Below are positions 13,901 through 43,196 of a DNA stretch of 64,000 nucleotides, piece by piece. Origin of the DNA: Saccostrea cucullata (taxonomy: Eukaryota); contig NW_026931035.1 in NCBI RefSeq assembly GCF_032062105.1, forward strand, positions 310,001-374,000, read 5' to 3'. The notes under the pieces were generated by a model that was not told the origin of the DNA, did not search any database, and worked only from the letters and a program-made list of their open reading frames with translations. Every line of letters begins with the position of its first letter. Position 1 is the stretch's first letter. The position numbers and the translations under genes were made by a program.

Positions 13901-16900
13901 ACAATTTGAAGTGCATTAACAAGTTCCCCTGTATCTTAACATGCAGTATGAAATTACCGTAATTGTTTGGGGGCTTTTTTCATTGTGCTGGACACGTGTT
14001 TGGTTTGCTCAGCCTTGAGTGATGTTTTTTGTTCTTTTTACTGCCTGAAATGCAAACAAGTGGAAATCGATTCTAAAACATCGACATATGTTCTTGTTTG
14101 GCCTCGATAAAAAATACCACTGACTATTAAAATTCCTGCCATGGACACGTTTACTTTTCCAAGCTAGCATTCTGACTAAGGCCTTCAGGGTTACTAAAGT
14201 TATCTTCTAAACAAAAATAGTATTCAGCTTTAAACTGCACTGGGAAATTCTAGGTCAAGATAATATGTTTTTTGTAAAATAAAAATGCAAATTAAAACAA
14301 ATGATTGCAAAATTTCTCAGTACCCAGGGATAAATTGACTTCCATGAACTGAGTAGAGCTATAAGCTGGCTGATGGGAATGGAAGCACATTTGGTTAATA
14401 TTAAAATTTCTACAGAAGCAATGGTTATCCAATACTACTGGTCACTAACCTCCAGAATGCCAGAACAGGTCATAGTGACCCTTGGCCAAACAGAAAATGA
14501 AGTAATGATATATTTTTCTTATCTGGTAAAATGATAACGAGAAAATGGCAAATAACAAAACTGAGGCCGGGCCTGGGGGGTTTTCCAATCCAGATGACCA
14601 ATGAAAAAAATGTGTGGGAAGCCATCACTGGGAGTCAAATATTTTGATGTTTTTAATAGTATGGTGTAGGTTTATAGAGGTCTTTTATTTTAATTGAACC
14701 TAACAAAATAAATGTTTACTCAATTTAAAACAAAGCTGGAATTCAGACAGGGAGAAATCAAGATCAGCATTTAAAAATTCTTTATATGATGCAAGACACA
14801 TTTAATTTTTTTTAAATCTTTATTTTCAAAATTTATACATTAAAATTTGGTTTATTTTAATTTCTAATGAATGCAAGATATATTCATTTCAAATCTAAGA
14901 GAGAGAGAGAGAGAAAATTCCTAGAGAATAAAGGTTTTTTGGTCTTATTGAGAAATTATACAGAGTTGCGAGTAAGTATGTGGGATGGGTTTTCATTTGC
15001 CCTTTGACCTGGTCAGTCATAAGTTTTTATTTCCCAGTGGGTCGGGGAATTTCCTTACTTTATTTTGTTGAAAGTGAAAAGTGTTCCCAAGTCACAGTCT
15101 GTTATGCGAGTTCATAAGTTGATTGTCAAATGTGTAGTCTCTTGATGGAAAAATATATTTCATTAGGAAGTGGAAAAATGTTCAATGCATCCAAAATCAC
15201 CAACGAAGTAGAGGAGGAGACAAGATCACAATAAATCAAAAAGGCAGAGTACTGGTTACATTAGTTCAAAAGCACAACGGGGACCTGCTAATTCTGTTTT
15301 AAGTGTGGAGCAGAGAGCTGGGTGTATCGTTACATGATCGTTTTATCGCTTAATCAAAGATATTATCATATCTGATAGAAAAATTATCCCAAAGTGGATG
15401 TTTATTGCATAAGAAATTATGCTTTTGTATGCAGAATATATACTTGATATCATTTGAAACAGAAATGCAGTAGGGTGAAGAATAAGAATTTTCTTTTCCA
15501 AAATAGGTTGAGTGAACTCTTCATTTTATTTATTCAACTTATGTTGAGAATTGCATGTATTTTTTGTTCCATCAAGATCTGGCTATCATAAATAGGAAAA
15601 GCTTGAATTGATTCATGATGGATGACAGCATCCCTTTTGAAAGAGTGACTATAAAGCCCAGCCCTTCTAATGACCAAAGAGCTCTCTTATAAATGGTCAG
15701 TCTTTCGTTATTGGGATAAAAATGTATCTTTCAGAAAATCTGTCAAAACAGTTATTGATTGACCGTCATACAAACAAATGTGGAGGATAATTTTTTCTGA
15801 CCTTGCGGTTCAGATGCAGGGCAAGACAATGGTCACTTAGCAATGGTCACTTAGAAGGACCGGTTCCTGGAAGTCGTGTTTTGTAGCAAAAACTGCAGAA
15901 ACCTCTGAGACACAGACGGTGTGGGTGTAAGATGCTCTGCATCAGAACACGTCCTCAGAATTTAACTGGAAAACAAGAGCTTTAATTCAGATGTGATAAT
16001 GAAATGATTTGCTGTGATTAATAAAATTATGTATCCTTCAAATATATCTATGTACATAAAGTACATAACCCAGTCACATTAAAATTGGGTTATTATAAAA
16101 AAAAGATCTTAGAAGAAAAGAGTAAGTAGCAAACATATTAGCAAACACATTTCATGCAAATATAAGTGAATTCTGGGCTAAGTACAAAAAAAAAAAAAAA
16201 AAAACAATTCATTTTTTCTTATAATGATAAGAAATTGTTCAGGTCTTAATTGTGTAACATGTCCCAGCCCATTGAGTATAATGTAAACAGCTGATAAATT
16301 GGTCCTGGGTTCAAATTCCACTTGTAAAAATTAAAACCTGTCATTTAGATTGGATATACACAAGTCTTGTGCCAGAGTAAGCAATGGGACCTTAATGTAA
16401 GCGGTGACAGGTGATTAAACAAGTAATTTGTTTTTTGCTTACATTCATCTTACGGGGTTTGAGACTGAAGGGTACCTTGCATGATGCAAAAATTACTAAA
16501 GACCCAAGAAAGCAAGTGATTAAAAAAAAAACCAAAGCTGTTTATTGCAAAATAAAAGCAGTGGGAGGGCCAGCTAATCCAATAGATTTTTGTGAGTGTT
16601 TTATTGATGTGGGGAGGAAATATGTTTTGAGAGATGACAAATCTGAAGAGATAGGAAGTAGAGAGTTCAAACTCAGGCAACTTGGTCATTATAGTAGAAA
16701 AATATGTCCTTCAAAGGCAGAAAAAAATACTTCTTTTCATGCTTGTTTAATTTGTCTTTGGGTTGGGACTTTTTACGAGCTTTCACTAAAAAGATGAATA
16801 AATACTTTTTTTTATTTTATCAGCTTCATTAAATGGCCAAAGGCAAAAGCGGTACAGTAATTTGACGTGAAATGGATTTCTGGTCCTGGTCAATATATTG

Positions 16901-18740
16901 GATAAAATAGTATGTGATATGCATTTTTGTGGCCGTGGGTCAGTTTGACCGGGATATTGATTTCCGTGTTCCATGGTCATTTAATACAAAAATGGACATC
17001 CCAGATAAAAAGATGGGGCCCGATACCAAAACCAAACTGATAAATTATGGAGATTAAAAGCCCTTTTATTAGTCCTCCTGAATATTTATATGTAAGATAA
17101 GTTTTTGTTAGTGGGACCTCTGATTAAACATGGACATAAATCTAAAGTCCAGTTGTAATTAGGATATGTTTTTGCCATTGGTTAATTAAGAAACTCTGGA
17201 GTTTGGCAATGAATCACGATATAAATAGGTTTAAGTTCCTTTAGTGGGTACGTAGATTTCAAATGAGGAGGGGTCTAGGTTTGTTTTTATCTACAGGGTT
17301 ATCAATAAAAATGATTTGCACTTCATGGGATGTTTTGACCGCTCCCCCATCGAAAAACTAAGCAAACAATACGAGTTGTTGTTTAGTGTCCAAACGATCA
17401 ATAGGTTTTAGCCGATAAAAAACGTAAATGGTCATAACATTACCGATGGTCACATGGGATACATGTAAGTTTCAATTTAGATACTTGCAGGTAAAATTAA
17501 ATTTATATCTTAGTTCTTAAGTTTAAAATGGTTTTTCAAAAAAGTTTTTTTTGTTGTTTAATGATATGGTTCTAATTTGTATTCAACAAGCAATTGATCA
17601 ATATTCGTGGTCACTCCAACTTTTTCTGTTGTTATCTATGTTTGGTCAAGAGGGATTTAAAATAAGAAAATCTGGTCGCATAACTTTCAATAAATTATGA
17701 TGATTTAGTGTAAAACTGAAAGGCTTTGACAGAAATGAGATGCAAACTGTTTTTCCTTGGTACTTTTGTCCACACGCTGACCCTCCATTTACTCTCAGCC
17801 AATATATGCACGGTCAGAGCATGCATAGGCATCTCCGTTAAAATAAAACATGTCTGTTTGTTTGTGGACATTACATGAGAGAGTGTCAGCATGAAATCAC
17901 TGGACATTTCTGTAAGTGTTTTTCTGGTACATGTATATAGGGTAAAGAAATAGCTTTTTAACTTCAAGACATTCTAAGTTTTGGGAACCCTTAATATTAA
18001 AGATCAGTTAATTTTGGGGATGCTGACAAAGTTTTACATTTTTTCCTCTTTTTTTCTTTGAATATTTGAATTTTATTATTATTTAAAAATTTTTTTTTGT
18101 CTTTTTTGTTTTTTGTTTTCATGATAAATGACATTTTGCTCGAGTTCTTTGAGGGGTATGACTAAGTTGACAGGGGTCACGGAGTAAGCTGATAAAAACT
18201 TTAGCTTTTAGATAACAGACAAAATGATTTAGATACAAGTATAAATTGTTTGTTTCCTATTGTTTGAGATATGATAACTGATTTACCAGTATATCATGTC
18301 ATCATCAGCTAAATTTTGTATTACATGTAATTGTTTTGCTTTTACGCATAATAACCCCTATTTTTATCAAATTTTTTTTGGTTGTAAAAATGTAAAATAT
18401 AAGGGAAGGCTTTTTTCTCATGGTTATTAATTTGATCTTTATTTTCAGTGACACTAGGTTCAAAAGTAAGAAATAGTACCAAGACAGTTTTTATTGGTGG
18501 ATTCAAATATGAAGATCAAAGTGACTGTCGCTTTTGAATCTAATTCCCTTAAAAACATTAAATTTATCATTTCCTTAAGAAGGGAATTTTTAGGAAATAT
18601 TTAGTTTCAATGGTATCAATTATTAATGGGTGTTGTAGGTCATTTTTCAGCTGTTGCACATTTATAAGTAATTAATATAAATCCTAAATGTTTCATATAT
18701 ATCTCTGTCTGTTTTCATATTTGTACAAATCAGACCATTA

Positions 18741-18833
18741 CCTTTGTTTTTCCATCTGTTTTAGGTAAGTCAGAAATCTAAAGATGGTTGTAGAAAAGTT
18801 ACAGGTACCTCCATATACAATTGATATGTAAGT
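18741..18833 (+). other. Candidate recursive splice site (ratchet point) with 63-nt cryptic exon
   Basis: CCTTTGTTTTTCCATCTGTTTTAG|GTAAGT (junction 18764/18765) and a second GTAAGT at 18828. Confidence 0.6.
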
Positions 18834-21800
18834 AATGCTTATATTTACCTGAAGCACATCATTTTTATTATCGCATTTCAGAAATACATTCTAAATCTCT
18901 TTCAACTATTTTCATTTATTTTGGTCTAAATTAAAATATGACCATTACAACTTAATGCTCAAACATATGTAATTCATCACTTTAAAGAATTAATTTGTAT
19001 TGGTAGCCCCAATAAAGTTTAAATTTGATTAGATTACTATCCAAAGTTCTCGAGAGACTGCAAAAGAAACAAAAATACCCATCTAAATACATGATCTCTT
19101 AGATTAAAATTTCTAATTAACAAAATGTTACACCATTTTATTCCCTGTAAATCTAACATTTTGGAAAATTAATTTCTAGCATTATATAACTAAAGCCATG
19201 ATTAGGCCGCAAAAATCCTGGAGAGATTATAGGTTCTGATTAATGATTTCAGGGGGTTTTCAAAGGATTTGTTTAATTAGTCAATTTTTCGGAGGGTTAT
19301 CAGTAAAGTTGCATAAGGAGGGTGGCTGTAATATTTTAGTGCCTGTCTTATCTCCGCTGGAGTAAGCTGTTTTAACTTGTCCACTCCTCAGAGTGGACAT
19401 ACTGAGTCAGAGGGTCAAACAAATAGCCATGTTGTAATCTCCACCAAAAGTTAATTTGACCCTTTCAGTTTAAGACCTCTCGCTGACTAAACAAATGTTT
19501 TATGGGGGGAGGAATTTTAAATAAACTGGCTTTTCTTGTCTAAAAGAGGAAATAAAATAGCCATGAAGAAACTTAAATGTAGTTCTGTTGGATAATTTAC
19601 CCCAAAATTACAACTTTACATTATTTACTTCTTTCCTATCTACCTACAATTTAGGGTCAATCTAAGAAACTTTTAACTAAGATAATTTTCACTTGATCTC
19701 CAAATTGTTAGAGGAACAAAAGAAGATTGTGAAACAAATGTTGAAGTGAATCACTTGCACATATTTTTTATTCTTCATTTTAACATACCTAGACTTTTAA
19801 AAGTGAATTGGTGAATTGTAAACTGACCATTATAGATGCTTAACCATGTTAACAATACTTTGAAAGTTAACAAAGAAGATATCTTTATGTAAAAAAAAAA
19901 AAAAAAAGAAGAAATAAAGTAGTAAAAAATTAACTTGAGGTGTATTGAATTTGACCACTTCCTGTAAATGGTTGAATGCTGTGTGTGTGGGATGTTTCAC
20001 ACTGGCCGTTTATCTGTTATACCCTTTTTATTTCTCAGATGTTCAGGTAATAGCCTTAGCATGGATCTCTCTGTGTAAATACAACTCTGGCCACTGCCCT
20101 ACAACTGGTCAGTATTGGTTATCAAGGTCATTGACCAGCCCACTAGTCACACCTGGTTCCAAAAATTAGGGCAGGTACTTCAGAAAAACATACATAGGTT
20201 ACTGTATTTATAAGAGTTTTTTTTTTAAGTTTATGCCATCATTTTTGTACAGTAGATTTATGGAAATAATCTTTTAATTAAAAAAAAACTAAAAAGGAAC
20301 ATCATTCTTAATTTGTAATTATAAAAAAAATTTAGAAGTAAATCCAATTTCCATCCAGAGTTTTATAGAAATTAGGGGATTTTTTTTTAATCAAAATTAC
20401 CTTGAAGATACCCCACCCCCAAAAAAATGTGAAAGTAAAAAAAAAATTAAAGTTGATATAAAGTGATTAATGATTGAATTTAGAGGGAGTGGTGGGCCTT
20501 TATAATGATAGAGTGAACTGAGTACAAGTAAATAGTGAATGTGTCCGTGCTGGACCAAGAAGTATTTGGTCAAAAGCTATAAACCAGACCATGTCTAAAC
20601 AACAAGCATTGTGTCATAAAACAATTTACACAAGATAGAAGGACCCATTTAAGTCAACAGTTGTTAAATAACATTTATTTGATATTCTGAAACAATAAAG
20701 CAGATAAGATTTAATCTTCGGCTTTTGCACCCCCTTTCATAAACTATTTAGTATATGTACTTGGAAACAAGATACTCAACTTGCTCTTAAATAGTTATAA
20801 AGTTTGCAATAAATAAAAAGAAAAGAGTAAAATTAGTTTATCTAAGTATTACTTTAAAAAAAAAAGATTAATTTTTTGACACACAAAAAAAAATTTCAAA
20901 CTGACAATTCACATTAAAGTTACTGTCAGAAAAATTCAGCATAAAATTCAAGTTCGGCATACTCAAATATTTTTGAAGCTGAAAAAAGTAAAAGTATTGG
21001 AAAAAATATTATATTTAGGAAGTTTATTTGTTTATTTTCTCCTTGTTTATTTGGACAAAATAAACTAAAAATTCTCTTTGAAATACTGACTTTACCATTA
21101 ATTTCTCACAAAAGATAAGCACTCTATTCTGGTCTTTGAGGAAACCTAGAGCTGTGGGTCAGTCCGAATAACTGAAGCAACATGATGGTTTTTTCTCAAA
21201 GATCAGAGCTATTCCCTCTGGTCAGTTTTGAGATAAGATAAAACTGAGTTATAAAGTACAGAGTGGGTCACCCATTAGATTGTTTACTGAATGTGTTTTT
21301 CTCAATGAGAACTCGTGGATGTTTTTAGCTGCCTGTCCGCACACACCAGATTTAGACGTAGAAATATCCTAGTTTTCTTTATAAACATGAATGACCCCAG
21401 TGATTTTCACTTCAATTCATACAGGTTTGAATTCTTAATTAATTTTGACTTTTTTTTTACAGCGAAAATATTTGAGTTTCAAACAAAACATTTTTTTTCC
21501 ATGAACTATTTAAATATCATGCTATCATTTTTTTTCTCAAGAAATAAAATCATGACTAATATTTGGTTAACATTCAGCATCTTTCAATGAAGACAACATA
21601 ATTCAAAAAAAATAATTTATTAGGAAGAAAATGGGAAAATGATTAGTTAGCCACCTATCTGAATTCTTACTGAATCAGTCACATTTTATATTTTTTTCAG
21701 TAAAACCTATATTCTGTGTTTTGATGCATTCTAAAAACTTTTAAATTTTTGACTCTTAAATAAGAGAGATGATTGATTAAGAGTGGAGATTCATCAGAAA

Positions 21801-22483
21801 ACAGGATCAACTGATTTTTAACCACAGGATCCTTTATTGAACAAATACTGTTTCCTGTTTTTAATTATCTTCTGTGGTATAAGTGACCTTGATTTGGTCT
21901 CCACACTTTAAATGTTCCCTTATATGACAAAACCTAGAGATTTTTATTATTTTCCTGCACAAATCTGTGTAAGATTTCACCTATTAACCTACCCCTGATT
22001 TAGACAGGAAGAGGATCTTACAGAACTTGAAGGTCGATCCTTATATAATTTCTATCCCCAACCAAAAATTATTCATCTTTCCAAATACTCAAAGTCCAGT
22101 AAAGGAAAAGAACTGCATAAAAGTTTTTTACACCCTATATTTAGACAGAAAAGCCCCTCCTATCCCCAACCCATCCCCCTCCCCAAAAAGATTTCATCAA
22201 TGTACCTACCTGGGGATTAGACAGGAAAGTGCCTCCTACACCCTCACCCTTCACACCCCCCAAAATAATTATCTTCTCAAACCAGAAGTATGCTTGCAAA
22301 AAAAAAGGCTCCAAAAAACTCTGCACAAAACTGCATCAATATACATGTATCTTCACAAGGTTAAGGCCGGAAAACCCCTTTCTATCCCCCCTCCCCCCAC
22401 GAAAAAGTTAATAAAAAGTTAATCTCCCCAAACAAAGGCCGCCTGCAGCTTCTGATTACATATCATATAAATACTGTAGCTGT

Positions 22484-22614
22484 CAGGCACCTGCTGTTAA
22501 TTATTTTTCTTGTAATAAAAAAATATACTCCCTACCTAATAATAAACTGTTTATTAATAGGTAGGCGGGGTATATCTTTTTATTACAAGAAAAATAAGTT
22601 ATGTCAGGTGCCTG
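22484..22614. repeat. ~130-bp near-perfect inverted repeat (foldback/MITE-like)
   Basis: CAGGCACCTG..TTATTTTTCTTGTAATAAAAA..CTACCTA is mirrored by TAGGTAG..TTTTTATTACAAGAAAAATAA..CAGGTGCCTG. Confidence 0.85.
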
Positions 22615-25007
22615 TGCATATAAATTATTGTGCTTTTCTCTGTGCTGTTGACCATTTGTTTAGAGAGTATAACTGCTTTACCGGTTTACCCATTTCAAAA
22701 TACAATGTAATATGACAGTTAAGTTTGTAAAAACTTAATAATTTATGTAACATCACCACCCCTCCCCCCTCCACACACCCACACAGTTTCTGATTTATGT
22801 AAGCTTAGTTGTTATGCATATATAGATAAGCTTTCAAGAGTTGTCACACTTTAGTTTTAAGATGAAAAAAAAAGTTACATAAAGATATTTGAAAGAATGC
22901 AAAGTAGCAAAATGCAGAGACAGTGAATTGTTAAATTTGTCATGAGTTTTATGGATTAGGTCTCACTACGTCATTTCTCTTTTCCTGTTAAATGACCATT
23001 TCCTCCGTTTGAGAAAATAATGTAGTCATTGTGACACATACACAATAAACAACCCTTAAAAAATTCGCTAACTGACCCATATACCACTAGCTAAAACTAG
23101 CCACACATCTGTCCAAAAAGGAAGAAAAAAAATGTAAGTTTTATCTTCCTCTCTGAAAATATAGAGAAAGTTCTGAATTTAAATCTAAGCAATTTTTATT
23201 AAGTAGAAATTTGTTTTTTTTTTTTTATTCAATACTAAGGATCATATTTATGGTTCTCTATCTTATTATTTTATGCACTTTTTTTAAAAAGAAATTTTAC
23301 AGTTAGTAATTGTAGTATTATGGTATCAATTCATAAGGTTGCATTCATTGACACATGAAATGGTAGTTAAAAAAAGGGAAACAACTGTGGATAAAAAGAG
23401 CACCTGTTCTCATTACTGAGACATGGCAGGGTATCATGTAAATTGCTGATGAAGCTATATCATTAAAATTTGGACTCAGAAATAGGAGTACTTCCTGTAT
23501 AGGAGTAACAAAATTATTGCTTCTCTTATCATATTTTTTTTCATGGAAAATTCTATTTCAGTTTCTTTCAATATAAATCAAAATGCAAAATATTTGAGAG
23601 AAAATAAAATCTAAAAGAAAAACTTTCATAGGAAAGAAAAAAATTCATTACATGTGTCCCCCCCCCCAAATTGTGATATTTTACACACTGCATTGTGTTT
23701 TAAATACATATTTTCATAATGTGCTAACATGGCTGTATTACTTGCACACTTCTAGTGCAATGCAAAAAAATGCTCATTCTATATTGATCAGACAACTTAA
23801 TTGTGAGGAAAAATTTTAAAATACAGTCAAAATGCTTATAAATACTGTATGCATCAACACGTTATTATCATTTATGCCTTCACGACTGATTTTAAAGCCT
23901 ATGGGAAGTAACTCTAGGAGATACCAGAGACTGGTACGGTACTATTTTTTCTCTCACAATTGCTGCGTTCTTTATCCAAGTCCAAAGTACCAAAGAGCAT
24001 GAAGATTATCTGTCCAATTTTTCAGGGAAGGGAATAAAACCATTGCTGTTTTGTCCCAATGTAAGGGTTTTGTTATAAGGAAGGTATAAATATTACAAAA
24101 TGATTAATTTGAGTTCTCCATATATCTTTGGTTTCCTGTTTCTCAACAGTTTAACACTGAAACATCAAAGATTGTTTTTTTTTCACACAGATTCAATCGA
24201 ACACTTGATACAAGTAACAGGAAAGGGAACTATCAGAGTCAATAGCATTATGTCTGTCTCACACTCAAATTATGGGTGGGCCCTGAAAATTAATTAATAT
24301 CATTTTTATTTTTTTTCCATTAAAAAAACTAAATATGAAGGCCTGAACTACCAGGACTTGACTATGAGAATATTACATGGTACTTGTATCACTATTCCTG
24401 TTACAATCGTGAGAAAGACAAAAAATTAACAACAAATGTTAGAACTTTGCTCTTTAACCTGAACAAGTGTTATTTTAGGATTTTTTCCATTAAAATGAAA
24501 AAAAAAAATTGACTCATATCAGAATTATGTATCAAACTTCAACTGATAAGGTTTCTACTTTAACTTTTTTGGTAAGTTTAAAAAAAAAAAGATTTTTACT
24601 TCTTTTTTAACTATTTTTATTTGTTTCAATTTTATGCAAATAATTATTTTCACCATGTTCAATTGGTCCATTATAATTAAAAAAAAAGATTCTTTTAGGA
24701 TTCTTGCACTTGATTTTTGTGCCATATTGCAGATTTTGAAAACTAATTCTTTTTAGGGAGTAATTGATAAAAAAAAAATAGATTCTGAAGCTAAAACAGA
24801 ATTAGAAGATCTCTGTAGATCTATGAGTAACTTATGAGTAAATTAAATGTCTTGATAAAGGAGTTATAATCCTTTTTCATTTCTTTTTGCACTTTTTGTT
24901 TCCCAGGCTTGACCATAGCAAAGTGAAATGAGACTGAAAAAAAAGATAAGAGTTAATGTCTCCTTAAAAAAATAATTTCTGTGAAAGAGAGAGAGACAAA
25001 AAGATTA

Positions 25008-25214
25008 CTGTGAAATCACAAATTTTCGAGGGGTTTAATTTTCGTTGTTTTCAAGATATGAAGAGACCCACGAATTCATGTCCACCACGAAATGTAAAAT
25101 ATTAAGTACATGACTACTCAACATTTCTTCACCCACGAATTCAAATCCCCATGAAGCAAGAGCTTTTACTCAAGCCACGAAACTTTGACTCCACTAAAAT
25201 ATGTGATTTTACAG
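25008..25214. mobile_element. TA-flanked MITE (Tc1/mariner/pogo-type)
   Basis: TIRs CTGTGAAATCACA / TGTGATTTTACAG with TA on both sides. A second, highly similar copy lies at 60618-60828. Confidence 0.85.
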
Positions 25215-28200
25215 TATTACGTGTTCAGGTCAGGTATATCAATATAAAAAGAGGGAAATTAATTTTTTTTAAAAATCTCAATGATGCCACAAGTACATTA
25301 TTTTTATACATATTTTTTTCATATTTAATTTCTCTAGTCATGTTAATGATACATGTACAAAAAATTGCCTTTAACAAAGCAGTCTGTTTACAAGTAACCA
25401 CAGTTTAGGATGTATTTAACAGACAATCCCTCGAGTGCAACAAATCCTTTCATGAGAAAATAATATAAAACAGTAACAGTGTTTCTTTAATATAAGTAGG
25501 ATGTTCCTCTGAAGTGTTTTGGCTCTGGACAGGAAGGGGATGAATTTTTCCATGTCTCATCCTTATTTTATTATGTACCAATGAAAAAAAATTGAATATG
25601 CGACGAAGAGAAAAATAGTGTGTGTGTTAGTTATTGCTTTCCGGTGAAGGAACCCTGCAACGGAAATTTTTGGAGAATGAAAAACTCAGCCATGAGCTGT
25701 CCACTTATGTAAAATAATAAAGAGTAAATTTAGAGTGGTGTACCAGGGCTTGTGGTTTTTTCCAGCAAAGTTCAATTGTACTTTTTTCTTTCAAGATTTC
25801 ACTCAAAATTACTTCTAGCCATCAAATTAAGCATGGGGCTTTTGTATAGAAAACAACCAGGGTTGGTAGGGGGTTGAGGAATTTGGAGTTATCTCCCTCA
25901 TAGCATTTTTTTTGTTTATACCAAATTCAAAAGCTGGTGTTCATTTTAAATACTCTAAGTTTATATTGTCAGTCGTAAATCATATGGCCTTAAATCACTT
26001 AATCCATACATGTTGAGTGTGCTTGTATACTGTCTTTTTCATGCATTGTATCCAAAAGGTCAAAAGAAAAAAAAATTCTTTTGCTATGAGTTAATGGCAT
26101 ACATTGAAAGTATGGGCTTTCATTCAAATTCTGTTTAATATGAACATCAATGTAATTTATTTTAGATCTCAAATTCAATTATAAAAGAAATTGCCTGTTA
26201 GTTTACATTACATTTCAACTCTTGCAAAACCCTAAAAAGTAGCCAGTGACAAAAGACTTTATTCAATTTACAAAATCCAAATGTTTTTATAACAAAAGTG
26301 TGTTATATTGGATTTTTTGTGAAGTTGCTTTTCATTTGTTGTACATTGATTAAAAAACCTGATTGAATATAAATACATCATTAATTTTTGAATGTCCCTG
26401 CTGAAATCTTTTCCACAAATATTGAAAAAAAGATTTGTCAATTGAAAAAACAGTTTCAATAACATATTGACATGGAGAAAAATAGAAAGGGATTTTTTTT
26501 TATGAGGGGTTGGGTGAACTTAAATAAAATGTTTTGTAAGAGAGAGGTAAAGATGTCATAAAAAAAGGTGAGGCCGAATCGGAAGATAAGTTTCACGTTG
26601 TGACAAGCACTTTGGACACCTGACTTTTTGCTCTGACCTGTGCTACGAGGCTCTTTAAAACAATCCACCTGTGGTATACAATCGTAATGATAAAAATCGA
26701 GAGTGATGAAAAAAAAACCCTCACTTTTTTTTTTGTAAAACAATGTGACCTTCTTAAGGAGGTTTCTAGTGTGGGATTTGACGTACGCGTGCAACCTTTG
26801 AAATGAATTGTTTAATTCCTGTTTGGAAAGGCTTTAAAAAATAATACTTGTTGAAAAATTGCAAGTTGTAAACAGAAATAAGGTAAGCTAGGGAGGCTTT
26901 TTTTCCAACCTCCATTTTTGTTTTTGTAATGACATTTCAAAATTCTTCTTCCAACTTTTCTTTCTTCTTTTTGTAATCCTTATCGAAAGAGAAAATGACA
27001 GCTGATTAGCACTATAGGTGTTTTGATAGTGTTTTTATTTTTCTAGTTTCCTCTCCAGGAAAATATACTAACTTTATCTGAGATTATCACATTGGTGGAA
27101 AAATAATTAATACATTTCGCTAAATTCCCACCCCCACTCTCTGTTATTTGTCTGCATTCAAGATGTACCTAGACAAATAGAAAACTATCTAATTAGTAAT
27201 TTCCGGTCGACTTCTTATGAAGGATTCTGAATTTTAACTTGATCGATCATTACTACTGTTATTATTTTAGGGGTAACATTTACACTTGATTCAACATTTA
27301 CAATTATTGACAATTAATTTTATCAACTGCTCGCATAGGCAAAGGATAAATGGTAAAATTTCAGTCCACTTTTAAAAAAAAAAAAGTAAAGAAAGAGGTG
27401 ATGTAGAAAACTAGAACCTCAACACCTCAGTTACTTGTTAACCCACCTTTAAGAAGGTGATTTATTTTAAATGAAAACAAAATTTAAGAAATACCATTGT
27501 GCAACCAGGGTTGACCCTAATCACTATGGTACAACTGACTAGCATGGGTCCAATAAATTTCCATATAATACAAAATATCTTTTTTAACTTCTGTTCAATA
27601 GAAGAATCCTTTGGTAACCCACGCAAAAAATTCAGATAGCCTAGCATTCAATTCTTCTTCTGTATCCCCCCAATTACCTGGATCCACTCCCCTATTTATC
27701 CTTTTCTACGTGCATCAGCATACATGTTTTCCCCAGATTTGTTTAAAATTTGTCATCAAGGTGTTGTTGTTTTTTAACAAAGAAACCTGAATAATAAAAT
27801 GGCCTTCTGAATCTTCCAAACATCATTAGTAGAGAGGAAAATCATATTAGCAAATAGCATTTAAAATTATTTCTTATGCAAAATGTTTGTCTTTTAGGAT
27901 TACATCATGAATAGAAATTGAACAAACTTCTTTACAGTTTGGGTATAAAATATAAAATGAATAATTATAATTCTACTAATAGTAATGAAAAACAAGGGGA
28001 TACAAATTGATATATGAAAACTTCATTTTCAAATGAGTGGTTTACAAGAAACATCATAGACTGCTTTACTACAACAAATAAAATCAATAAATAAGGGTTC
28101 ATTTAAGTAATGTATCTCCGAATGGGAAGAGATATACCAGTGTTTTATATGACTGTTTGTCTGTGTGTCTGTCAGGTGTCACAGTATCCTGACCAGGTCA

Positions 28201-29678
28201 TAACTAATGGGTCACTGATTGGAAGAAATTCAAATTGCCCATGACCTCTTAGACTTAAGGTTATGTCTAAAAGGTCAAGGTCACTAGGCAATAAGATTAT
28301 GAAATGGTGCTAGGGTCATACAGATACGTTACAGGAATAGGGGAGGGAAATTTTTTAATATTTCTAGATATATACATTTACACGTAAATGTCAAGTTATT
28401 TAAATTCCAATGAAATATATATTAAAATTAGGAAGGAAAAATTGTTGATTTAGACTGGATCATTCCACCAACCCAGCAGTTACTCTGACTAGAGCTAAAG
28501 CCTGATGTTCCCTTTATAACCTCTCCCTCTCCACATTTTTAACAGTACATGTGTATGATTTTTTTCTCTCCAATTTAAAGATGAACTATAAGATATACTA
28601 TCACTGTGTATACAATGAATACTTGAAAGATAATAACACCTCGATAAAAACAATGGTGAAACTCCCGACCTCCTGTGAAAAACGCCATATTTTGATGAAG
28701 GAGTGTCCTTTCTGCACGAAAAAAACATGATAATGCCTGATAAAAATGGTCATAAGGGCAAAAATGCCCACCACAGGTTCAAAGTTAACAATATATGACA
28801 ATATTGGTGTATTATCTATATCTTTGTTTAGTGTGAGAGAGAGACAATGCAAGCTGTCTGCAAGATGAAGGGCTAAGTTAATGTAATTAATTAACTGATA
28901 ATCAATTATGGATGTGTTCAGGTAGGGGGCATAACTCTTCCTATGTTCTAATTTTCCAACTGATACATTTTTTAAAGTTACTTGAATTATGCATAGTATT
29001 TATAAACAGAACTTTTGAATAGTTTTAAAAATAATTGAGTTAATTAAAGATCTGAGATTAACCAGCAGCTTAAATGGTGCTATTTAAAATCAACTCTTTT
29101 TACATCTCTTTAAATTGTGTGTTCAGTTTCAAAAGTTGCAAGTACAGTAGAACACAGTTATAATGAACAAGCTTATACTGAATTCACACTTACAGTGAAA
29201 TGCTTTTCATTCGATGTAGGTTTTAAAAACTTGTCAGATATTTTAATTATACTTAAAAACAAATCTCTTAACTACTTAAATCATGTTTTTCTGAAATATA
29301 AACATAATGCGAGAGAAATTTCCCAATGTAGCTAATGCAGTTATTTTTTTAAGTAGCTGAACTACATTACCATACAACAAATATTAATTCAATATCAGCA
29401 AGATAAGTATATTTGATGTTATAATATTCTACAATAATTTTCACTTTAGAATTAAATGTCAAATCTTTTCAAACACATAAGGTTCATTCATAATTTTTAT
29501 ATATTACAACTTGTTTACACCTAATTTATTAGCACTAATAAAAATGCACAGACTCACTGAATGAAAAAATTATCCAATAGAAATTACGATGAACTCTTTA
29601 CAGAAAGGTTTGTGTAGGATGTTCTTAATTAATAGAGAAAAAGCAGATATAAAAAAGCCTTTCTTCATTTCCTTACAG

Positions 29679-30205
29679 GAAAGACATTGTGTCTCCACAG
29701 GCCGCGGATACTGGCGAAAAAATACCCAGTCCAGGCACCATCACCTCAGGCAATTTTCATCCTAAATCACATGACTCTCCCTTAAACTCGGAACCTCACA
29801 CGCCCGAAAAATCGGACAGATCCACGCCACCCCCAGGGCCGGAGAACCATCCCAACAGGAACCCCAGTCCCTCAGATCTCAAACAGCCATTTTATTCTGG
29901 CTACCACACTCCCAACCTTCAGGATTTTAAGTCGTCTTTCGGAGGGAGCTATCCAAGCCCTGGTGTGGGATTTCCCAAAACTCCGACGAGTCAGGACGGG
30001 GACACCCCCCGGGGTCATCTCTCCCTACAGAGGAGCTTCAGCCTATCCGACAGTTTCCATGACGATAACTCCAACTCCTCCGAGTCATCATTCCTAAATC
30101 CCAACACTGGTCAGCCTAATTACACCCGCGACCCCAACACTGGACAGATCACCTACCAGCCTAATAAGGAGGGAATCTTCTTCTGCCATCTCTGTAGCTT
30201 CTCTG
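29679..30205 (+). CDS. hb: hunchback coding exon 3 (Pro/Ser-rich region and first half of N-terminal finger 1, ...GIFFCHLCSFS)
   Basis: TTCTTCATTTCCTTACAG acceptor; corresponds to ORF 29689..30240; G|GTTGGT donor in phase 1. Confidence 0.9.
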
Positions 30206-32169
30206 GTTGGTATTTAATATTAATTGTCATATTACAATAATCCTATTCAATATTATGCAGACATAAATAATTAACAATACCCACACTTTTTTTTTATGCA
30301 ACATATGCAACATATAAAATGCTCTTACTGAAAACCAAATAAAGGATAAAAACTAAATAAAGGATAAATTGTTTAAATGCATCAGCACAATTTTAATTTG
30401 TGGTCTACCAGGTCCCATAAAATCTTTTATTTTAATTCATACTGGTCCTTTTTTTATGTTTGGGTATTTTTTTAAATACTTTAAAGAAAGTTTAAACCAA
30501 TTAGCAGCAGTTGGCTTTTAAATGTAAGCCGAAAAAAAAAGTGTTCTATGTAAAACAATTATCTATTACGTAATTTCTTTAACACGGTCGGATTATAACA
30601 TTTACTTAAAATAGCTTAATAGTGATATAAAGATTTTGCTTTTCTTTTTTTTTCCATAATGAGATTTTCAATTGGCTAAAAATCAAGCAATATTAATGAT
30701 TACAGCATGCTTGCTCTTTGTAAAGCTGAAATAAATAATTCCAAGGATCTATTTTCATCTTTTGTCCATCCACAAATATCAAAACATTCTAAAAGTCGTA
30801 AACAACTATCTGGAATCATGGAGGGAAAAAAAATCCATTAACAAAAAAATTTAAAGCCAAGTTTATAAAATAGTTTTTAAGAGTCCCTAGATAAAATAGA
30901 TTTTATTTTTATAGAGTTTAAACTTTTTCTAATGATGGCATGATTTACAGGTTTAGTGTTTGAGCTGGGTTAAAAATGGTTAACAAAGTGCCACATAACT
31001 GTGTTGACCCCATGTCTTTTGTTGACACAAAAAAGGGGTGTATATATGCTGAAGGAACCTTTTATGGCCCTGTTGTTTTGTGACCACGTCCATTATCAAG
31101 TGTTTTGTTACTGTAAAAACCTGCCTGTACAAAACTTCTCTCATGTTGACTTAAGACACAGTTTATCTAAAATCAAATATTTAAGATAAGTGGTGCCCTG
31201 AGAGCTGGCCGATATTTTATCAAATATGTAATTATAAATGATCCATTTTCTTGCCACAAACATGTGCATGTACTTCATGTACAAGATACTACATCAATTT
31301 AATTCTGAAGTGAAGCATTAATTAATTTTCTGTTATTGGTGTTCCTTAATAGTACAAGTCTAAATGTCAAAATTGAAAAAACAACATGAAAAATAAGCTC
31401 AATATATAATGTATATCGCTCAATATTTAATATATATATATCATGTACTATTTTTTTTATTTTATAATAATTTTCAAGCAATAATAAAAAAAATCTGACT
31501 ATCATATGGAAAAAAAAGTTTAAATGTCAGAATTCAGAGTTAATTTTCTAGGGCTTTTTGTTCTTGTTAAAGACACACACTTGTCTATATGTATTTATAG
31601 TCCAGCTGATAAAGAGAGATAAACTAAGATCAAAGGTACAATGTTAAGTTCTCAAAAAAAAGATTATACTATCAGCACATGGGGAAAATCACCATGTGTG
31701 GAGATGTTATAAAGGCCTGCTTAACAAATATCACTGAAATATGATCTGAAACAGTATAAAAATAGAAAAGGAAAGTTTGATACAAAAACTATTAAGTTTT
31801 AATAACGAGAGGCCTATAGGCCACAAAACTTACCTGGCTTAACTTTTCTTCATAACAAACAAATTATGAAATGGTCCTTTGTTACTGTTGATATTTCACC
31901 AAATTTATTGTTGCCTTGTATAAAATTTACATATTTATTGTGGTTCTAACTCTTGTCCACATAAATGTGATCTGAATAGATCTCTAATTTACTACCCCTG
32001 GAGATGTGTTAATACACATTAAATTGAATCTTGTCTTTTGGACTCTCTTACTTATCAAAATGCAGGCTAAAAAATTATTCCTTTATAATTTTAAGACAAA
32101 CTTTGATTTTTCAAAGTTGATAATTCACTCTAAGAGGCATTTATACAAATTTTATTTTCTAGAAGCTTT

Positions 32170-32700
32170 ACTCATTCTAAGTTTGAGTTACATATGAACT
32201 ACTTGTTCTGAGTTTGAGTTACATATGAACTACTTATTCTGAGTTTGAGTTACATATGTACTACTCATTTTGAGTTTGAGTTACATATAAACTACTTGTT
32301 CTGTCAGTTTGAGTAACATATGAACTACTTGTTCTGAGTTTGAGTTACATATGAACTACTTGTTCTGTCAGTTTGAGTAACATATGAAATACTTGTTCTG
32401 AGTTTGAGTTACATATGAACTACTTGTTCTGAGTTTGAACTACTACTTGTTCTGAGTTTGAGTAACATATGAACTACTTGCTCTGAGTTTGAGTTACATA
32501 TGAACTACTTGTTCTGTCAGTTTGAGTTACATATGAAATACTTGTTCTGAGTTTGAGTTACATATGAACTACTTATTCTGAGTTTGAGTTACATATGAAC
32601 TATTTGTTCTGAGTTTGAGTAACATATGAACTACTAGTTCTGAATTTTGAGATTGAGTAACATACAGGATCAAGTGGTTTTGAGTTTGAGTAACATATGA
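32170..32700. repeat. 31-bp minisatellite (GAACTACTTGTTCTGAGTTTGAGTTACATAT), ~16 copies
   Basis: Tandem units of 31 bp (some 33-bp variants) ending just before the acceptor of hb exon 4. Confidence 0.95.
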
Positions 32701-32714
32701 CATTTCTTTTATAG

Positions 32715-32929
32715 GAACTACTCGTTCTGACTTTGAGGATCATATGACATGCCACTTTGAGCACATCTGTCCACACTGTGATTACAAGTCTCGGACCGAG
32801 GGCCGACTAAAGCGACACATTAAAGATTTTCACACAGAGGAGTCACCGGACGGTTTTGGTTCCAAACGCAATATGGGAAGACCCAAAATTTTTCGCTGCA
32901 AGCAGTGCGATTTTGTTGCCACTGACAAG
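32715..32929 (+). CDS. hb: hunchback coding exon 4 (GTTRSDFEDHMTCHFEHICPHCDYKSRTEGRLKRHIKDFH...FRCKQCDFVATDK)
   Basis: TTTCTTTTATAG acceptor (phase 1). Completes finger 1, contains finger 2 and starts the first middle finger. AAG|GTAACT donor, phase 0. Confidence 0.95.
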
Positions 32930-33108
32930 GTAACTGAAAAGCATCCTATACTTTAAGTCTTCGTAAGATCTTGCAGAAAAAAGAGCAATTGAGATGTTAG
33001 AGGTTTATCATTAAAGGATAAAAAGAAAATTGTCAAAAATAATTCATAATTCTTAAGGGAAAAAAGTTAATAAAATTGTCTTCAATGATTTCATTTTCTC
33101 TTTTGTAG

Positions 33109-35232
33109 AATGACTTTTGGCAGCATGCTCGATCTCATATCAAGGAGGAGAAACTTCTGCAGTGTCCTCGCTGTGAGTTTGTCACTGAATACAAACATCA
33201 CCTTGAGTATCATCTCCGAAATCATTTTGGATCCAAACCATTCAAGTGCAACAAGTGCAATTACTCCTGTGTAAACAAATCCATGCTTAATTCCCACATG
33301 AAATCCCACACCAATGTGTACCAATATCGCTGTGCGGACTGCACTTACGCCACCAAGTACTGCCACAGTCTTAAGCTTCATCTGCGGAAATACAACCACA
33401 AGCCAGCCACAGTCCTGAATACAGATGGTAGCCTCCCACAGGGGATAGATGCAGAGTCCTCAGGATTGTCTCTGTTACAGAAGAGGGGGCCACCACGGGG
33501 GCCAAGGGGTCCAAGAAAGGATAAGTTTGACCCATTTGTTGGACAGTTTATGATGCCTCACTCACTACCGGGCATGGCTCCAACACTGAGTCCTGGGATG
33601 ATGTCTCCATTTTGGCCTCTGCTCAATCAAGTACCAAACGGACTGCCTCCACCCCATCACCCAATGATACCAACACCACTCAGTGCTAAGCTGCCTTCAC
33701 ATCTTGGGCAAAATAAAATGATGCCATCCTCACCATTTGGTTTCAGGCCCCTCATGCCAGGGAACATGGGTGCACCTTTTAAATGCAATCTCTGCTCATT
33801 TGCCACAGATATTCAGCAGGACCTGCTTCGTCATGTTATGAAAGTACATGCATCAGAAAACTCAGACTTATTTTCCATTTTTGGTATTTCATCAGAAGCT
33901 TTGCTTGAGGAACAAAATAGGAAGATGAATTTCCTTTCACAGCAGCAGGTAACTCCACTTAGAGAATTAACTACACCTGAGAAATCCATTCCCACCTCTG
34001 CAGCTCTTCATATCAAAACAGAACAACCTACTCTAGAAAGTTCCAAAACAAGTCCCCATTCATGGCCTCATCACTCACCACCAAACAGTAAGCCTAACCC
34101 AGAAAGCAGACCAACTAGTCACTACAGCATGCCAGAAATGAACTACAGTTCCTACCTTAATGGCAAAGCTAGTCCCAAAGAAGCAGATGCTCCAGAGGGT
34201 GAAGACATCATCAAACAAATGATGAACAAGTTTGGTTCAGGGGTTCCTATTGAAAAGTCCCAAATTGCTCCAACACTGCAGCTAGAAAGACCATTCCGAG
34301 AAAGTCCACTTGACCTCACAAAATCCTCTAGGTCACCTTCTGATGACATGGATGACCCAGCCAATGATGGGGGAAACCTGTCCAGTGGTGAAAACTCAAA
34401 CACTGCTGAGAATGTGGTGAACAGAAAAAGATCTCGCAAAGGAAAAGCTTTCAAACTGGACACACTCTGTCTGAAACTGCAGGAGAAACAGGCGGACAAC
34501 CCAGAGGAGGAAGAGGAAAGTAACTCAGGGATGGAAGACATGGAAGATGAGCTGCAGATTGATGAAATGAATGAGTACGACAACATGGAAACCAATGAAG
34601 AGGGAGACGATGAAGAACCAAAGAGCAAAGAGCCGAGACTGGGAGAGATGGAGTCAATGACAGACCTTCAGAGGTTTGAACAGATGAGGAAACTTGCAGC
34701 TGCTGCCGATGCAAGTCCAACAGACCAGTTTGAGAGAAGTCCTTCTGCACCAATCAATGAACCAGCTTTTCCCAATGAGTCCAAGGATAAAGTGGATGCA
34801 AGTGAAGAACAAATTGATCCCAAAGAGTTCATTGAGGAGATGAGTAATTTGTCTGAGAACGTTCCTCAGGCTGTCAGAAGAGGGACGGAGCTGGCCTGGA
34901 AGATCATCCAGGACACCACAGGGGCACCTGTCCCCCCACCCGTTACCACGGCAACCTCCAACGGCCACTACAGGAGTGAAGATAATAAACAATTCCCTGT
35001 CTCACAAGACATGCATCTCTTCACAACTAGTACACCAAGGGACAAAAATGGACACAAAAGTGCCAAGTATGAATGCCCTTACTGTGAGATCGCATTTAGA
35101 GATTGTGTCATGTACACAATGCACATGGGTTACCATGGTTACAAGAATCCATTCAAATGTAACATGTGTGGTTACCATGGGCACGATAAGGTGGAATTTT
35201 TTCTCCACATCGCCAGGGAAGCCCACAACTAA
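33109..35232 (+). CDS. hb: hunchback terminal coding exon (middle DNA-binding fingers, extra finger, basic box, C-terminal finger pair)
   Basis: Diagnostic Hb sequences [80 protein letters not shown], and [19 protein letters not shown]...PFKCNMCG...[18 protein letters not shown] acceptor; TAA stop. Confidence 0.98.
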
Positions 35233-36099
35233 ACAATTCTCCACATTCAAAGCAATAAATTATAAGATTTATAACTCAAGGATGAGTTGAGTAGAAACAG
35301 CATATGGACTATAATCATTAGTGCTATTTCTGCTAAGTATTTTTTTCACTTTCTTGATTTTAATGATTTGTTAATGATGCTTTTTTTTAACCGTTATTTG
35401 ACTTTGGTTTTGGGACCAGATGCACCTTGTGGTAGTATTTTGTTGGCAGGTGCTGGCTTTTAGTGCTTTGCTTGAGGTTTTTTTGTCCAAACATGCTAAT
35501 TTTTAAATACAGAAATTAATCCCGGTTTTTCATGGAAAAAAAACTAGTCATTTTATTAAATATTATTTAAAGGGAGAACCATTAGTCCTAAAAAAGTAAG
35601 CTTCATACACTAATTAGTTACAAAAGTAAGCTACATACACTAATTAGTTACAAATTTATACTTAACATATTTAGAAAATGCATGGGTCAAATTTTGTTTT
35701 AAGTCAGTATTTAAATTTTTTTTTCATATTATAACTTTTTATTAAAATACATTCCTTCTCAAGATTAACCCCCAGTAACTTGGCTGGTTGATAGCTTTAC
35801 ATCACCATTATTTATAAAAGTTTACAGGCCTGTTGAAAAAAAATTGTTTGCAAGTTTTATCTGTTTATATTTTTCAGTCAGAAAGGTGCTCAATTTAAAA
35901 ATGTGCTTAATTTAAATCTGCACAAATTGTGCTCTTTCTTGTTTATTGTTATATGTTTTTAGTATATACTGGTAACATTGGTCTTATTGAATTTTTAACT
36001 TATACGTTGTCTGTTGAAATCTTTGATATTTCCACATGGTTCCGACTGTTTTTTTTTTTTTTTTTTTTTTACAACATCACCATAACTAGAATCACCACT

Positions 36100-36870
36100 T
36101 CACTGTGCAATAAGGATCATGTAATCTTTTGTAATTTAAGTTTCATAAAAGTATAACTCAGGGATAAATATTGTGTGCTTTGATTTTATGATGCTCTTGC
36201 CACGAGGACTCCTCTACAACCCCCCATCCCCACCCCTTTTTGTCCACTAGGTTTCCTTAACACACCCCACCCCCCTTTTATCCACTAGGTATCCTTAACA
36301 CACCCCTATCCCACCCCACCCACCCTCTATTAACTAGATATAGAGTACTGTATCTATAATTACGTGAATTTTCACTGTTTGCAATTGTACTAATTTTTTT
36401 ACTGTAATTAAATGTTTAAATCAGTGTAGTTTTGATGTCAGTTCAGATATATATGTTTATTTATAAAATGTCGACCATTTCTGTCATTTTTATTGTACAT
36501 ACAATTTTTCTATATAATCCAGCAATACTAGTAGTAATACAGTGTGTATAGTATTTTTTTTAAATCCAGCTGTGTGTTATTTATAGTTCTATAGTGTATG
36601 TGTATTTTATCATTTACCCTCAGTGGAGGATTTTTTGTGTAATTCAGCAATAACTTGTACATACATATAAGTAACACTTTACGTGGGCATTGACATTTAT
36701 AGTCACATTTTTTTTTTACTATATTAGCCAGCGTCTACCTCAGTAGCTGATTATCGTTAGCGTTTTCAATCACTCGCCTTGATTTCATGTACAGCAAAGC
36801 CTAAGAAATATATGAGAGCAGATAGAGTTATCTCCCTTAAGATGGTCACTCTTCACAATGGCTACCTCTA
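36100..36870 (+). promoter_or_regulatory. hb 3' UTR regulatory cluster: miR-92, miR-125/lin-4, miR-31 and let-7 (x2) seed sites plus Pumilio/NRE-type elements
   Basis: GTGCAATA 36105; CTCAGGGA 36157; TCTTGCCA 36195; ATTGTACATA 36492; TGTACATA 36656; CTACCTCA 36735; CTACCTC 36862. Confidence 0.7.
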
Positions 36871-37773
36871 TTAGCAGATCATTGCCAGAGACAATTCAAA
36901 ATTGAATTGATATGCATTTTAATTACTTTAATGATATTTTAAATTGAGGAACATTTTAAAGTCCACCTAAAAAGAGATTTTTGAAATGTATAATTTTCAC
37001 AAGATCAGCTGTTCTTTTTAACAGCTGTGCAGATTAATTTGGCTGTTTGAAGTCTAGAATTTCAAAGTTACAAATATTTAAAAAGAAGTAAAAATATGTA
37101 TTTTTTAAAATTTTAATTGTATCTTTTAGCATGGAATATATTCTAGTGTTTTATGCACAGTCATTAAGTGTTATTTATTTCACTCATCCAAACATTTTTC
37201 ATCTATTTATTATGTTACCCCTTATGGTAATTAAATTTTTAATTACACATCTTAATTCACAATTCTTTAGCATCACACACCTTCCCCGAAAGTGGGACAC
37301 ATCTTAACCAACACATGGTCATTATCTAAAATATTCCATAATAAATCATCATCTTAATTTAGCTCTTCAATTTTTATCTTCTGGATTCCCACCATTATTA
37401 TATGAAGTTGCTCAGAATTAATGAAAACTACATTCCAAAAACTCTTGCCATCTCTGAATTGGGAATCCTTTATCGGCAGGGATAAAAGACATCATTTTGC
37501 CCAGAAAAAGAGCATGTAAAAAATATAATGTGTTTTTATTTGAATTATTTCAATATCAGCTAATGATATGTAATAGTTTAATGCAAGAAATTGATTTAAT
37601 TCTTTGTTTTCCAATTACAGGTGTTTGTGTAAAATGAAAGTAGTTCTTGAACTGCCAATCTACTTTCTAATTAATTAAGATCCTCGTATATATCTTATTT
37701 AATTTGATGTTTATTATAGGGTTAGTCTATTTCTTATCATTAATTGTCAGTGATTAAATGTACTAAGTGGTGT

Positions 37774-37810
37774 AATAAAAATATGCAAATCACCTTCAGT
37801 GTTTTAATGT
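37774..37810 (+). terminator. Candidate hb polyadenylation signal
   Basis: AATAAA at 37774-37779 followed ~20 nt later by CA and a GT/T-rich stretch (CAGTGTTTTAATGTTTTT). Confidence 0.5.
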
Positions 37811-38237: not shown

Positions 38238-38840
38238 AGGCCCTGGGCAACAACACTCACCTGCTTGAGTATATTTGGCCCTGTCTTTGTAACAGAATTC
38301 CCCCATTGGGGCCCCACCCTACCCCTGGGGACCATGATTTCAACAGTTTAGAATCTACGCTATCTTAGGATGCTTCCACATAAGTTTAATCTTTTCTGGT
38401 CTAGTTGTTTCTTAATAAGAAGATTTTTCCGATATATTTCATTGTAAAACTTTGATACCTTTTTGTTGCATCACCATACAAATGGGGACCATGATTTGAA
38501 CAATTAAGAATCTACACTACCCCAGGATGCTTCCACATAAGTTTCATCTTTTCTGGCCCTGTGGATCTTGAGAAGAAGATTTTTCAAGATTTTTCCTATA
38601 TATTTCATTGTTAAACTTTGACTCTCTATTGCAGCCCCACCCTACCCCCGGGGATCATGATTTGAAGAATTTAGAATCTACACTACCCCAGGATGCTTCC
38701 ACATATATTTTATCTTTTCTGGCTAAGTGATTCTTGAGAGGAACATTTTCAAAGATTTTTTCCTGAACAGTTCATTGTAAAACTTTGACTCCTTGTTGTG
38801 GCCCCACCCTAGCCCTGGGGAACATGATTTAAAATCTACA
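38238..38840. repeat. ~160-bp satellite-like tandem units (~4 copies), probably the internal array of a Helentron/HINE-type element
   Basis: Recurring GCCCCACCCTACCCC..GGGGA.CATGATTT..AGAATCTACACTACCCCAGGATGCTTCCACATA units. Degenerate relatives near 48800 and 51570-51990. Confidence 0.7.
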
Positions 38841-42932: not shown

Positions 42933-43196
42933 CTGTCAGCACGGCACACTTTGACCCTGCCGCTGCTGCCTTGGTAACGGGGTGGTGGAGTGGGATGTGT
43001 CTGGGGACGGACACCTGTGTCTCCTCTGTAATCATGGACAACTGTCCGTACTCTGAGTTCCCCCAGCCGAACAGATCCCCTCGCTCCGATACCGCCAGCA
43101 CGCAGTCCGCCTTACTGGCTAGCTGTACGATCCTCTCCCCAGCAATGTCTCCACCCACTAAAGATGGCCGCCACTCACAGTGGTAATGTTGTAAAC
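42933..43196 (-). CDS. RCC1L: RCC1L exon (GLQHYHCEWRPSLVGGDIAGE...LFGWGNSEYGQL...CAVLT)
   Basis: LFGWGNSEY is characteristic of RCC1L; canonical splice sites, phase 1/1. Confidence 0.95.

What the first reader, a model, noticed from the sequence alone, without database searches (positions are those of the whole stretch)
36143..36868. Heterochronic let-7 and lin-4/miR-125 sites in a mollusc-type hunchback 3' UTR
Seen: (1) a let-7 8mer CTACCTCA (36735-36742) preceded by ACTATAT-T-AGCC (36718-36729), which pairs with the let-7 3' half (3'-UGAUAUG-UUGG-5', two G:U), giving a seed/loop/3'-paired site like nematode let-7 complementary sites; (2) a second let-7 7mer CTACCTC (36862-36868) with upstream ACAA matching nt 13-16; (3) a miR-125/lin-4 8mer CTCAGGGA (36157-36164) with upstream TCATAA able to pair the miRNA 3' end. 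Established: C. elegans hbl-1 is repressed by let-7-family and lin-4 miRNAs through its 3' UTR to time larval transitions; let-7 and miR-125 are co-clustered, late-expressed miRNAs in bilaterians. Inference: the miRNA-hb timing circuit is ancestral to protostomes and may gate larval-to-juvenile metamorphosis here.
Basis: partly seen in the sequence, partly recalled or inferred. Interest (0 to 1): 0.85.

Follow-up and report, generated by a model that had tools for sequence, protein, structure and literature searches.

The report
let-7/miR-125 sites in oyster hunchback

Summary
The three seed matches are exact. They lie in the ~2.57 kb 3' UTR of the single hunchback gene of a Saccostrea oyster: the poly(A) signal at 37774 is conserved in three oysters, and RNA contigs of a relative cover the sites. 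The genome encodes matching let-7 and miR-125. In nine other taxa the let-7 8mer follows the hb stop in 6 and the miR-125 8mer in 4 within 3.5 kb (chance 0.24 and 0.20); within 6.1 kb, 7 and 6. These two seeds top an alignment-free ranking of all 65,536 8-mers, although the UTRs cannot be aligned beyond oysters. Lingula has two let-7 8mers and a miR-125 8mer. Ecdysozoan support is weaker (Priapulus 7mers; one Limulus let-7 8mer), Capitella is weak. The claimed 3'-supplementary pairing is real for one let-7 site but fades outside Saccostrea; for miR-125 it is no better than chance. The UTR also keeps sites for other miRNAs and a Pumilio element. Published oyster data show both miRNAs rising from veliger to pediveliger and again in adults, with no jump at settlement, so gating metamorphosis is unsupported.

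The parts
10767..35232 (+). hunchback coding region, four coding exons (about 10767-10921, 29679-30205, 32715-32929, 33109-35232 stop); searched exon by exon, no joined model built
   Evidence: tblastn of S. echinata Hb, 92-100% per exon; last exon 97% to S. echinata 'protein hunchback-like'; single copy in genome; splice sites
35233..37805 (+). hb 3' UTR, about 2.57 kb
   Evidence: Relative's RNA contigs and reads cover it to about 37770; collinear conservation in three oysters ends just after the AATAAA
36157..36164 (+). miR-125/lin-4 8mer site
   Evidence: lies on a contig that looks spliced and runs from the last exon to 36223
36735..36742 (+). let-7 8mer site
   Evidence: conserved in register in three oysters
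36718..36729 (+). 3'-supplementary pairing to let-7 nt 11-21; kept in S. echinata, degraded in the third oyster
36862..36868 (+). let-7 7mer-m8 site (low predicted accessibility)
37774..37779 (+). conserved AATAAA, probable poly(A) signal
   Evidence: in register in three oysters; a relative's RNA contig ends at 37773
36490..36501 (+). Nanos/Pumilio-type element (NBS+PRE consensus); a second PRE at 36656-36663
   Evidence: consensus from PMC5785226
36195..36202 (+). miR-31 8mer, conserved in three oysters (second one at 37443-37450)
36521..36653 (+). two miR-137 seed sites (36521, 36646) conserved in three oysters
36105..36112 (+). miR-92 8mer, present in three oysters, Pinctada and the heterodont bivalve L035
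   Evidence: mature sequence read from the C. gigas hairpin
37408..37414 (+). miR-87 7mer-m8; the same 7mer follows hb in most taxa examined

Best explanation
These are functional canonical seed sites. Argonaute loaded with let-7 and miR-125, both from the miR-100/let-7/miR-125 cluster, binds the hb 3' UTR and lowers Hb output by deadenylation and translational repression as the miRNAs rise in late larval, juvenile and adult life. This would switch off an early-fate transcription factor, as let-7-family/lin-4 do for hbl-1 in C. elegans. Selection has kept the pair at least since the mollusc-brachiopod ancestor. It acts with Pumilio-type elements and other miRNA sites. Shown: sequence, approximate UTR extent, miRNA genes, cross-species excess. 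Inferred: binding, repression, timing role.
For: Nine unseen taxa: let-7 8mer in 6 and miR-125 8mer in 4 within 3.5 kb (expected 0.24, 0.20); 7 and 6 within 6.1 kb (0.33, 0.23); letter-permuted seeds reach at most 3. Among all 65,536 8-mers the four top ranks are these seed words or their 1-nt shifts. Sense strand 8 and 5 hits, antisense 1 and 0, control DNA expects 0.48 and 0.19 (window included). UTRs unalignable beyond oysters. All three sites among 52 of 2593 three-way identical 8-mer positions or in identical runs. Order miR-125 then let-7 in all bivalves examined. miRNA genes in own genome. C. gigas let-7 rises 5,600 to 46,000 RPM trochophore to pediveliger and 312,000 in adult; miR-125 about 150 to 2,100 to 48,000 (PMC4138081). 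C. elegans precedent (bioRxiv 698977).
Against: No reporter, CLIP or hb time course. UTR ends are unknown outside oysters; Solemya sites lie 3.7-6.0 kb out and the Limulus miR-125 site 6 kb out beyond a gap, probably outside the UTR. The 6.1 kb window was set after seeing Solemya. Capitella has only a let-7 7mer-A1 (p~0.1); Patella lacks a miR-125 8mer. One to three let-7 sites against ten in C. elegans. RNA evidence is from a related species, low in depth and in pieces across the let-7 sites.
Confidence: 0.8

Rival explanations
1. The let-7/miR-125-hunchback link is one inherited circuit from the protostome ancestor (shared with nematode hbl-1) that times juvenile-to-later cell fates; this is the strong form of the best explanation.
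For: Priapulus: two miR-125 7mers and a let-7 7mer-A1 with good 3' pairing before the first AATAAA (p~0.02); Limulus let-7 8mer at +106 (p~0.017); two unidentified short metagenome hb pieces with a miR-125 8mer where 0.07 are expected; C. elegans ten let-7 and one lin-4 site.
Against: Ecdysozoan sites are mostly 7mers with modest p; short crustacean-like pieces have none; the order differs in Lingula; unalignable UTRs cannot prove homology; no insect UTR examined.
Confidence: 0.55
2. Functional sites, but for general late or adult dampening and tissue clearing (neurons, nephridia, muscle) in a UTR targeted by many miRNAs, with no stage-timing role; nematode and lophotrochozoan sites may have arisen separately.
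For: The oyster UTR also keeps miR-31, -92, -133, -137, -279 seeds; let-7 is about 31% of adult miRNA reads and present in every organ; hb is expressed in spiralian nephridia (bioRxiv 2020.11.15.378034; PMC10396302).
Against: Of these, let-7 and miR-125 are the two that persist most widely and outrank every other 8-mer, the same pair as in C. elegans.
Confidence: 0.35
3. The circuit is the gate for metamorphosis: miRNA-driven loss of Hb triggers settlement and the larva-to-spat change.
For: Both miRNAs climb 8- to 19-fold up to the competent pediveliger in C. gigas; Drosophila let-7/miR-125 act at metamorphosis (cited).
Against: No step between pediveliger and spat (let-7 46,052 to 36,850; miR-125 1,730 to 2,482 RPM); in Rapana miR-125 and miR-100 rise only after metamorphosis.
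Confidence: 0.2
4. Chance seed matches in AT-rich downstream DNA.
For: Each 8mer has a 1-2% chance per UTR and the miRNAs were chosen after the fact.
Confidence: 0.03

Closest known systems
C. elegans hbl-1 3' UTR, repressed by let-7-family (mir-48/84/241) and lin-4 (Abrahante 2003; Lin 2003; Ilbay and Ambros, bioRxiv 698977)
   Same: Orthologous hunchback-family target, same two seed families, several let-7 sites and one lin-4/miR-125 site.
   Different: [quoted passage not shown]
Drosophila let-7-Complex targets chinmo and broad-Z3 (PMC4979967, PMC7144073, abstracts)
   Same: Zinc-finger temporal factor co-targeted by let-7 and miR-125 from one cluster.
   Different: Different target genes (BTB-ZF proteins, own knowledge). 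Fly hb is best known for Nanos/Pumilio/Brat control; its UTR was not examined here.
let-7/lin-41 and let-7, miR-125/lin-28, the deeply conserved heterochronic pairs
   Same: Seed sites kept over great distances; this genome's lin-28 has a let-7 8mer 493 nt after its apparent stop.
   Different: lin-41 sites depend on 3' pairing, which is not conserved here; no miR-125 7mer or 8mer was seen near the oyster lin-28 stop.
Drosophila hunchback Nanos response element (PMC5785226)
   Same: An NBS+PRE consensus lies in the same UTR in oysters, other bivalves and Capitella.
   Different: No Box A-Box B pair found; PREs only about twofold over background.

Membership tests
hunchback gene family | Central C2H2 cluster plus C-terminal two-finger domain; best hits are Hb | tested here: met
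canonical miRNA target sites | Perfect match to nt 2-8 of a miRNA encoded in the same genome, with t1A for 8mers | tested here: met
canonical miRNA target sites | Located in the 3' UTR of the mRNA | tested here: met
   Relative's RNA and conserved poly(A) signal; not shown in this species; let-7 sites lie on a separate contig
canonical miRNA target sites | Conserved above background | tested here: met
canonical miRNA target sites | Seed-dependent repression or Argonaute binding | not testable with these tools
   needs reporter or CLIP
nematode-type let-7 complementary site (lin-41 type) | Conserved extensive 3' pairing | tested here: not met
   p=0.04 in window, 0.07 S. echinata, 0.17-0.95 in the other bivalves and Lingula
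heterochronic pathway (hbl-1 module) | miRNAs rise during post-embryonic development | tested here: met
   published C. gigas table; eggs and blastulae also score high, from small libraries
heterochronic pathway (hbl-1 module) | Hb falls reciprocally with the miRNAs | not tested
heterochronic pathway (hbl-1 module) | Loss of sites reiterates earlier fates | not testable with these tools
   needs genome editing
protostome-ancestral interaction | Excess of sites in both Spiralia and Ecdysozoa | tested here: inconclusive
   strong in molluscs and brachiopod; suggestive in Priapulus and Limulus; weak in Capitella

The most novel reading that the evidence does not exclude
let-7/miR-125 repression of hunchback is a single circuit inherited from the last protostome ancestor, making the hbl-1 arm of the C. 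elegans heterochronic pathway a Cambrian-age timing module that also times larval progression towards competence in molluscs and brachiopods.
Probability: 0.4. Interest if true: 0.85.

Novelty: new member of a known kind. Interest (0 to 1): 0.72.

Why it matters
Few miRNA-target pairs are known to span phyla; let-7/lin-41 and lin-28 are the usual examples (own knowledge). The papers I read describe the hbl-1 link in Caenorhabditis only. Finding the same two seeds as the best-conserved words behind hunchback in bivalves and a brachiopod gives a specific, editable target for asking whether the heterochronic pathway times life-cycle progress in trochophore animals, with a side interest for oyster larval rearing.

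Tried and rejected
Proximal AATAAA at 35254 as the UTR end: not kept in S. echinata, and a relative's contig runs past it. Conserved 3'-supplementary pairing: rejected. miR-100 co-targeting: no site in this UTR; 7-8mers in Pinctada, Capitella, Priapulus only. Full Box A-Box B NRE: none. Structured RNA: no Rfam hit in the window. Three contig look-ups (Mytilus, Mizuhopecten, Haliotis isoforms) returned nothing. Most metagenome hb contigs end too soon after the stop. Paper searches for the claim found nothing; the library lacks most subscription journals, so absence is weak. PMC2981144 was not held. Zero read depth beyond 37728 is not independent proof of the 3' end, since homology to relatives also ends there. 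The spliced gene model was searched exon by exon and not joined.

Full report
The gene. The last exon encodes a protein 97% identical to Saccostrea echinata Hunchback, with mollusc, brachiopod, annelid and arthropod Hb proteins next. It has the central finger cluster and the C-terminal finger pair, four coding exons from 10767 to the stop at 35232, and is single-copy. The window is therefore from a Saccostrea rock oyster.

The observation. All three seed matches are exact. The genome encodes canonical let-7 with miR-100 about 440 nt upstream and miR-125 20.6 kb downstream on the same strand. Duplex folding confirms the described let-7 site 1 geometry (p=0.04), while the 3' pairing claimed for site 2 and for miR-125 is not better than random UTR sequence. 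A relative also carries a substitution at 36145 inside the claimed miR-125 pairing.

Are the sites in the mRNA? RNA runs of a related species give a contig that starts at the last exon's splice acceptor and runs to 36223, past the miR-125 site. A second run has pieces over 36519-37019 (both let-7 sites) and on to 37750. A distal contig of the first run, at the same depth as its main contig (77), ends at 37773. The AATAAA at 37774 is in register in three oysters and similarity to S. echinata stops at 37805. The UTR is thus about 2.57 kb. Caveats: another species, one run only guessed to be RNA, raw reads at depth 1-5, and the let-7 region is not on one contig with the coding exon.

Conservation. 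In three oysters (42% three-way identity, 52 of 2593 8-mers identical) all three sites sit in identical blocks. Beyond oysters the UTRs do not align, yet the sites recur, counted from the stop: Pinctada miR-125 8mer +1459, let-7 8mer +1857; Solemya +3664, then +5482 and +6005; a heterodont clam from a metagenome +2130, +2968; Lingula let-7 8mers +2240, +2509, a 7mer +2708, miR-125 8mer +3001, then AATAAA; Patella let-7 8mer +1604 and only a miR-125 7mer at +4363; Capitella one let-7 7mer-A1; Priapulus miR-125 7mers +1126, +1205 and a let-7 7mer-A1 +2896; one Limulus paralogue a let-7 8mer at +106. Taxa were chosen for phylogenetic spread before their sequence was seen. Over these nine (third oyster included) the let-7 8mer occurs in 6 and the miR-125 8mer in 4 within 3.5 kb, against 0.24 and 0.20 expected; within 6.1 kb, a limit set after seeing Solemya, 7 and 6 against 0.33 and 0.23. 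Permuted seeds reach at most 3. In an alignment-free ranking of all 8-mers over eight taxa the top four words are the two seeds and their one-base shifts; without oysters and at 3.5 kb they rank 3 and 11. The antisense strand and flanking DNA show no excess.

How it probably works. Canonical 8mer sites recruit miRISC and lower mRNA stability and translation (established knowledge). In C. gigas let-7 is 5,600-6,200 RPM from trochophore to D-larva, 18,000 in umbo, 43,000-46,000 in pediveliger, 37,000 in spat and 312,000 in adult; miR-125 follows 110-190, 790, 1,700-2,100, 2,500 and 48,000 (PMC4138081; egg and blastula values are also high). So repression should build through late larval life and be strongest in adults. 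In C. elegans, deleting the ten let-7 sites and one lin-4 site of hbl-1 reiterates L2 fates. I infer a similar shut-down of an early-fate factor. Binding, repression and phenotype are not shown. The lack of a step at spat, and the post-metamorphic rise in Rapana, argue against a trigger for metamorphosis. Known spiralian hb expression includes nephridia, so tissue clearing is a real rival.

Context in the UTR. Other blocks conserved among oysters match miR-31, -137 and -133 (genes verified), miR-92 and miR-279 (sequences from papers). A miR-87 7mer (gene verified) follows hb in most taxa, and a Nanos/Pumilio consensus lies at 36490-36501. The UTR is a dense regulatory platform in which let-7 and miR-125 are the most deeply kept 8mer inputs.

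Comparison and novelty. It works like the hbl-1 arm of the nematode heterochronic pathway, and like fly chinmo/broad co-targeting by the let-7 cluster. It passes every testable criterion for conserved canonical sites but fails the test for conserved lin-41-type 3' pairing. Lophotrochozoan conservation is strongly supported; protostome ancestry is plausible but rests on modest ecdysozoan signals (p about 0.02 each) plus C. elegans, and independent gains cannot be excluded. Four paper searches found no report of the interaction outside nematodes, in a library that lacks most subscription journals. The scan's notes hold nothing similar on other DNA. Verdict: real conserved feature, new member of a known kind, interest 0.72.

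Noticed in passing
L009 (Patella hb, after 28578): The limpet keeps the let-7 8mer but has no miR-125 8mer; the limpet Lottia is reported to lack miR-125 (PMC3384580). Possible site loss with miRNA loss; Patella's miR-125 status not checked.
   Followed up: partly
G000:C11803 minus strand, about 236850-230800 (L064): lin-28 homologue with a let-7 8mer 493 nt after its apparent stop and another at +3426; no miR-125 7-8mer nearby.
   Followed up: partly
window 37408-37414 and L002, L005, L007-L009, L011, L035, L053: miR-87 seed match downstream of hb in 9 of 11 taxa (10 hits against 2.3 expected); a possible third ancient input.
   Followed up: partly
L005, L007, L008, L011, L035: miR-9 8mer (seed from memory) downstream of hb in five taxa but absent from Saccostrea.
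   Followed up: partly
L008 +2708 and L007 +553 after the stop: The Lingula and Capitella let-7 7mer-A1 sites share a downstream GAATGTAG, perhaps a homologous site.
   Followed up: no
window 36490-36501, 36656-36663: Nanos/Pumilio-type elements; NBS+PRE consensus also in other bivalves and Capitella.
   Followed up: partly
window 35318-35331, 35461-35469, 35886-35934, 35519-35528, 36880-36889: Blocks identical in three oysters (several GTGCT cores; ATCCCGGTTT; CATTGCCAGA) that I could not assign to a miRNA.
   Followed up: no
window 32175-32647: 31-bp minisatellite (15 copies) ending just before the third coding exon; its unit resembles the intron-exon junction sequence.
   Followed up: no
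window 38311-38830; 44147-47806: 166-bp high-copy repeat just beyond the UTR (huge read depth); 33-bp and 108-bp tandem arrays, one giving a repetitive 235-aa ORF at 46946-47653.
   Followed up: no
L040, L049: Unidentified metagenome hb genes (one annelid-like by best hit) with a miR-125/lin-4 8mer within 450 nt of the stop.
   Followed up: partly
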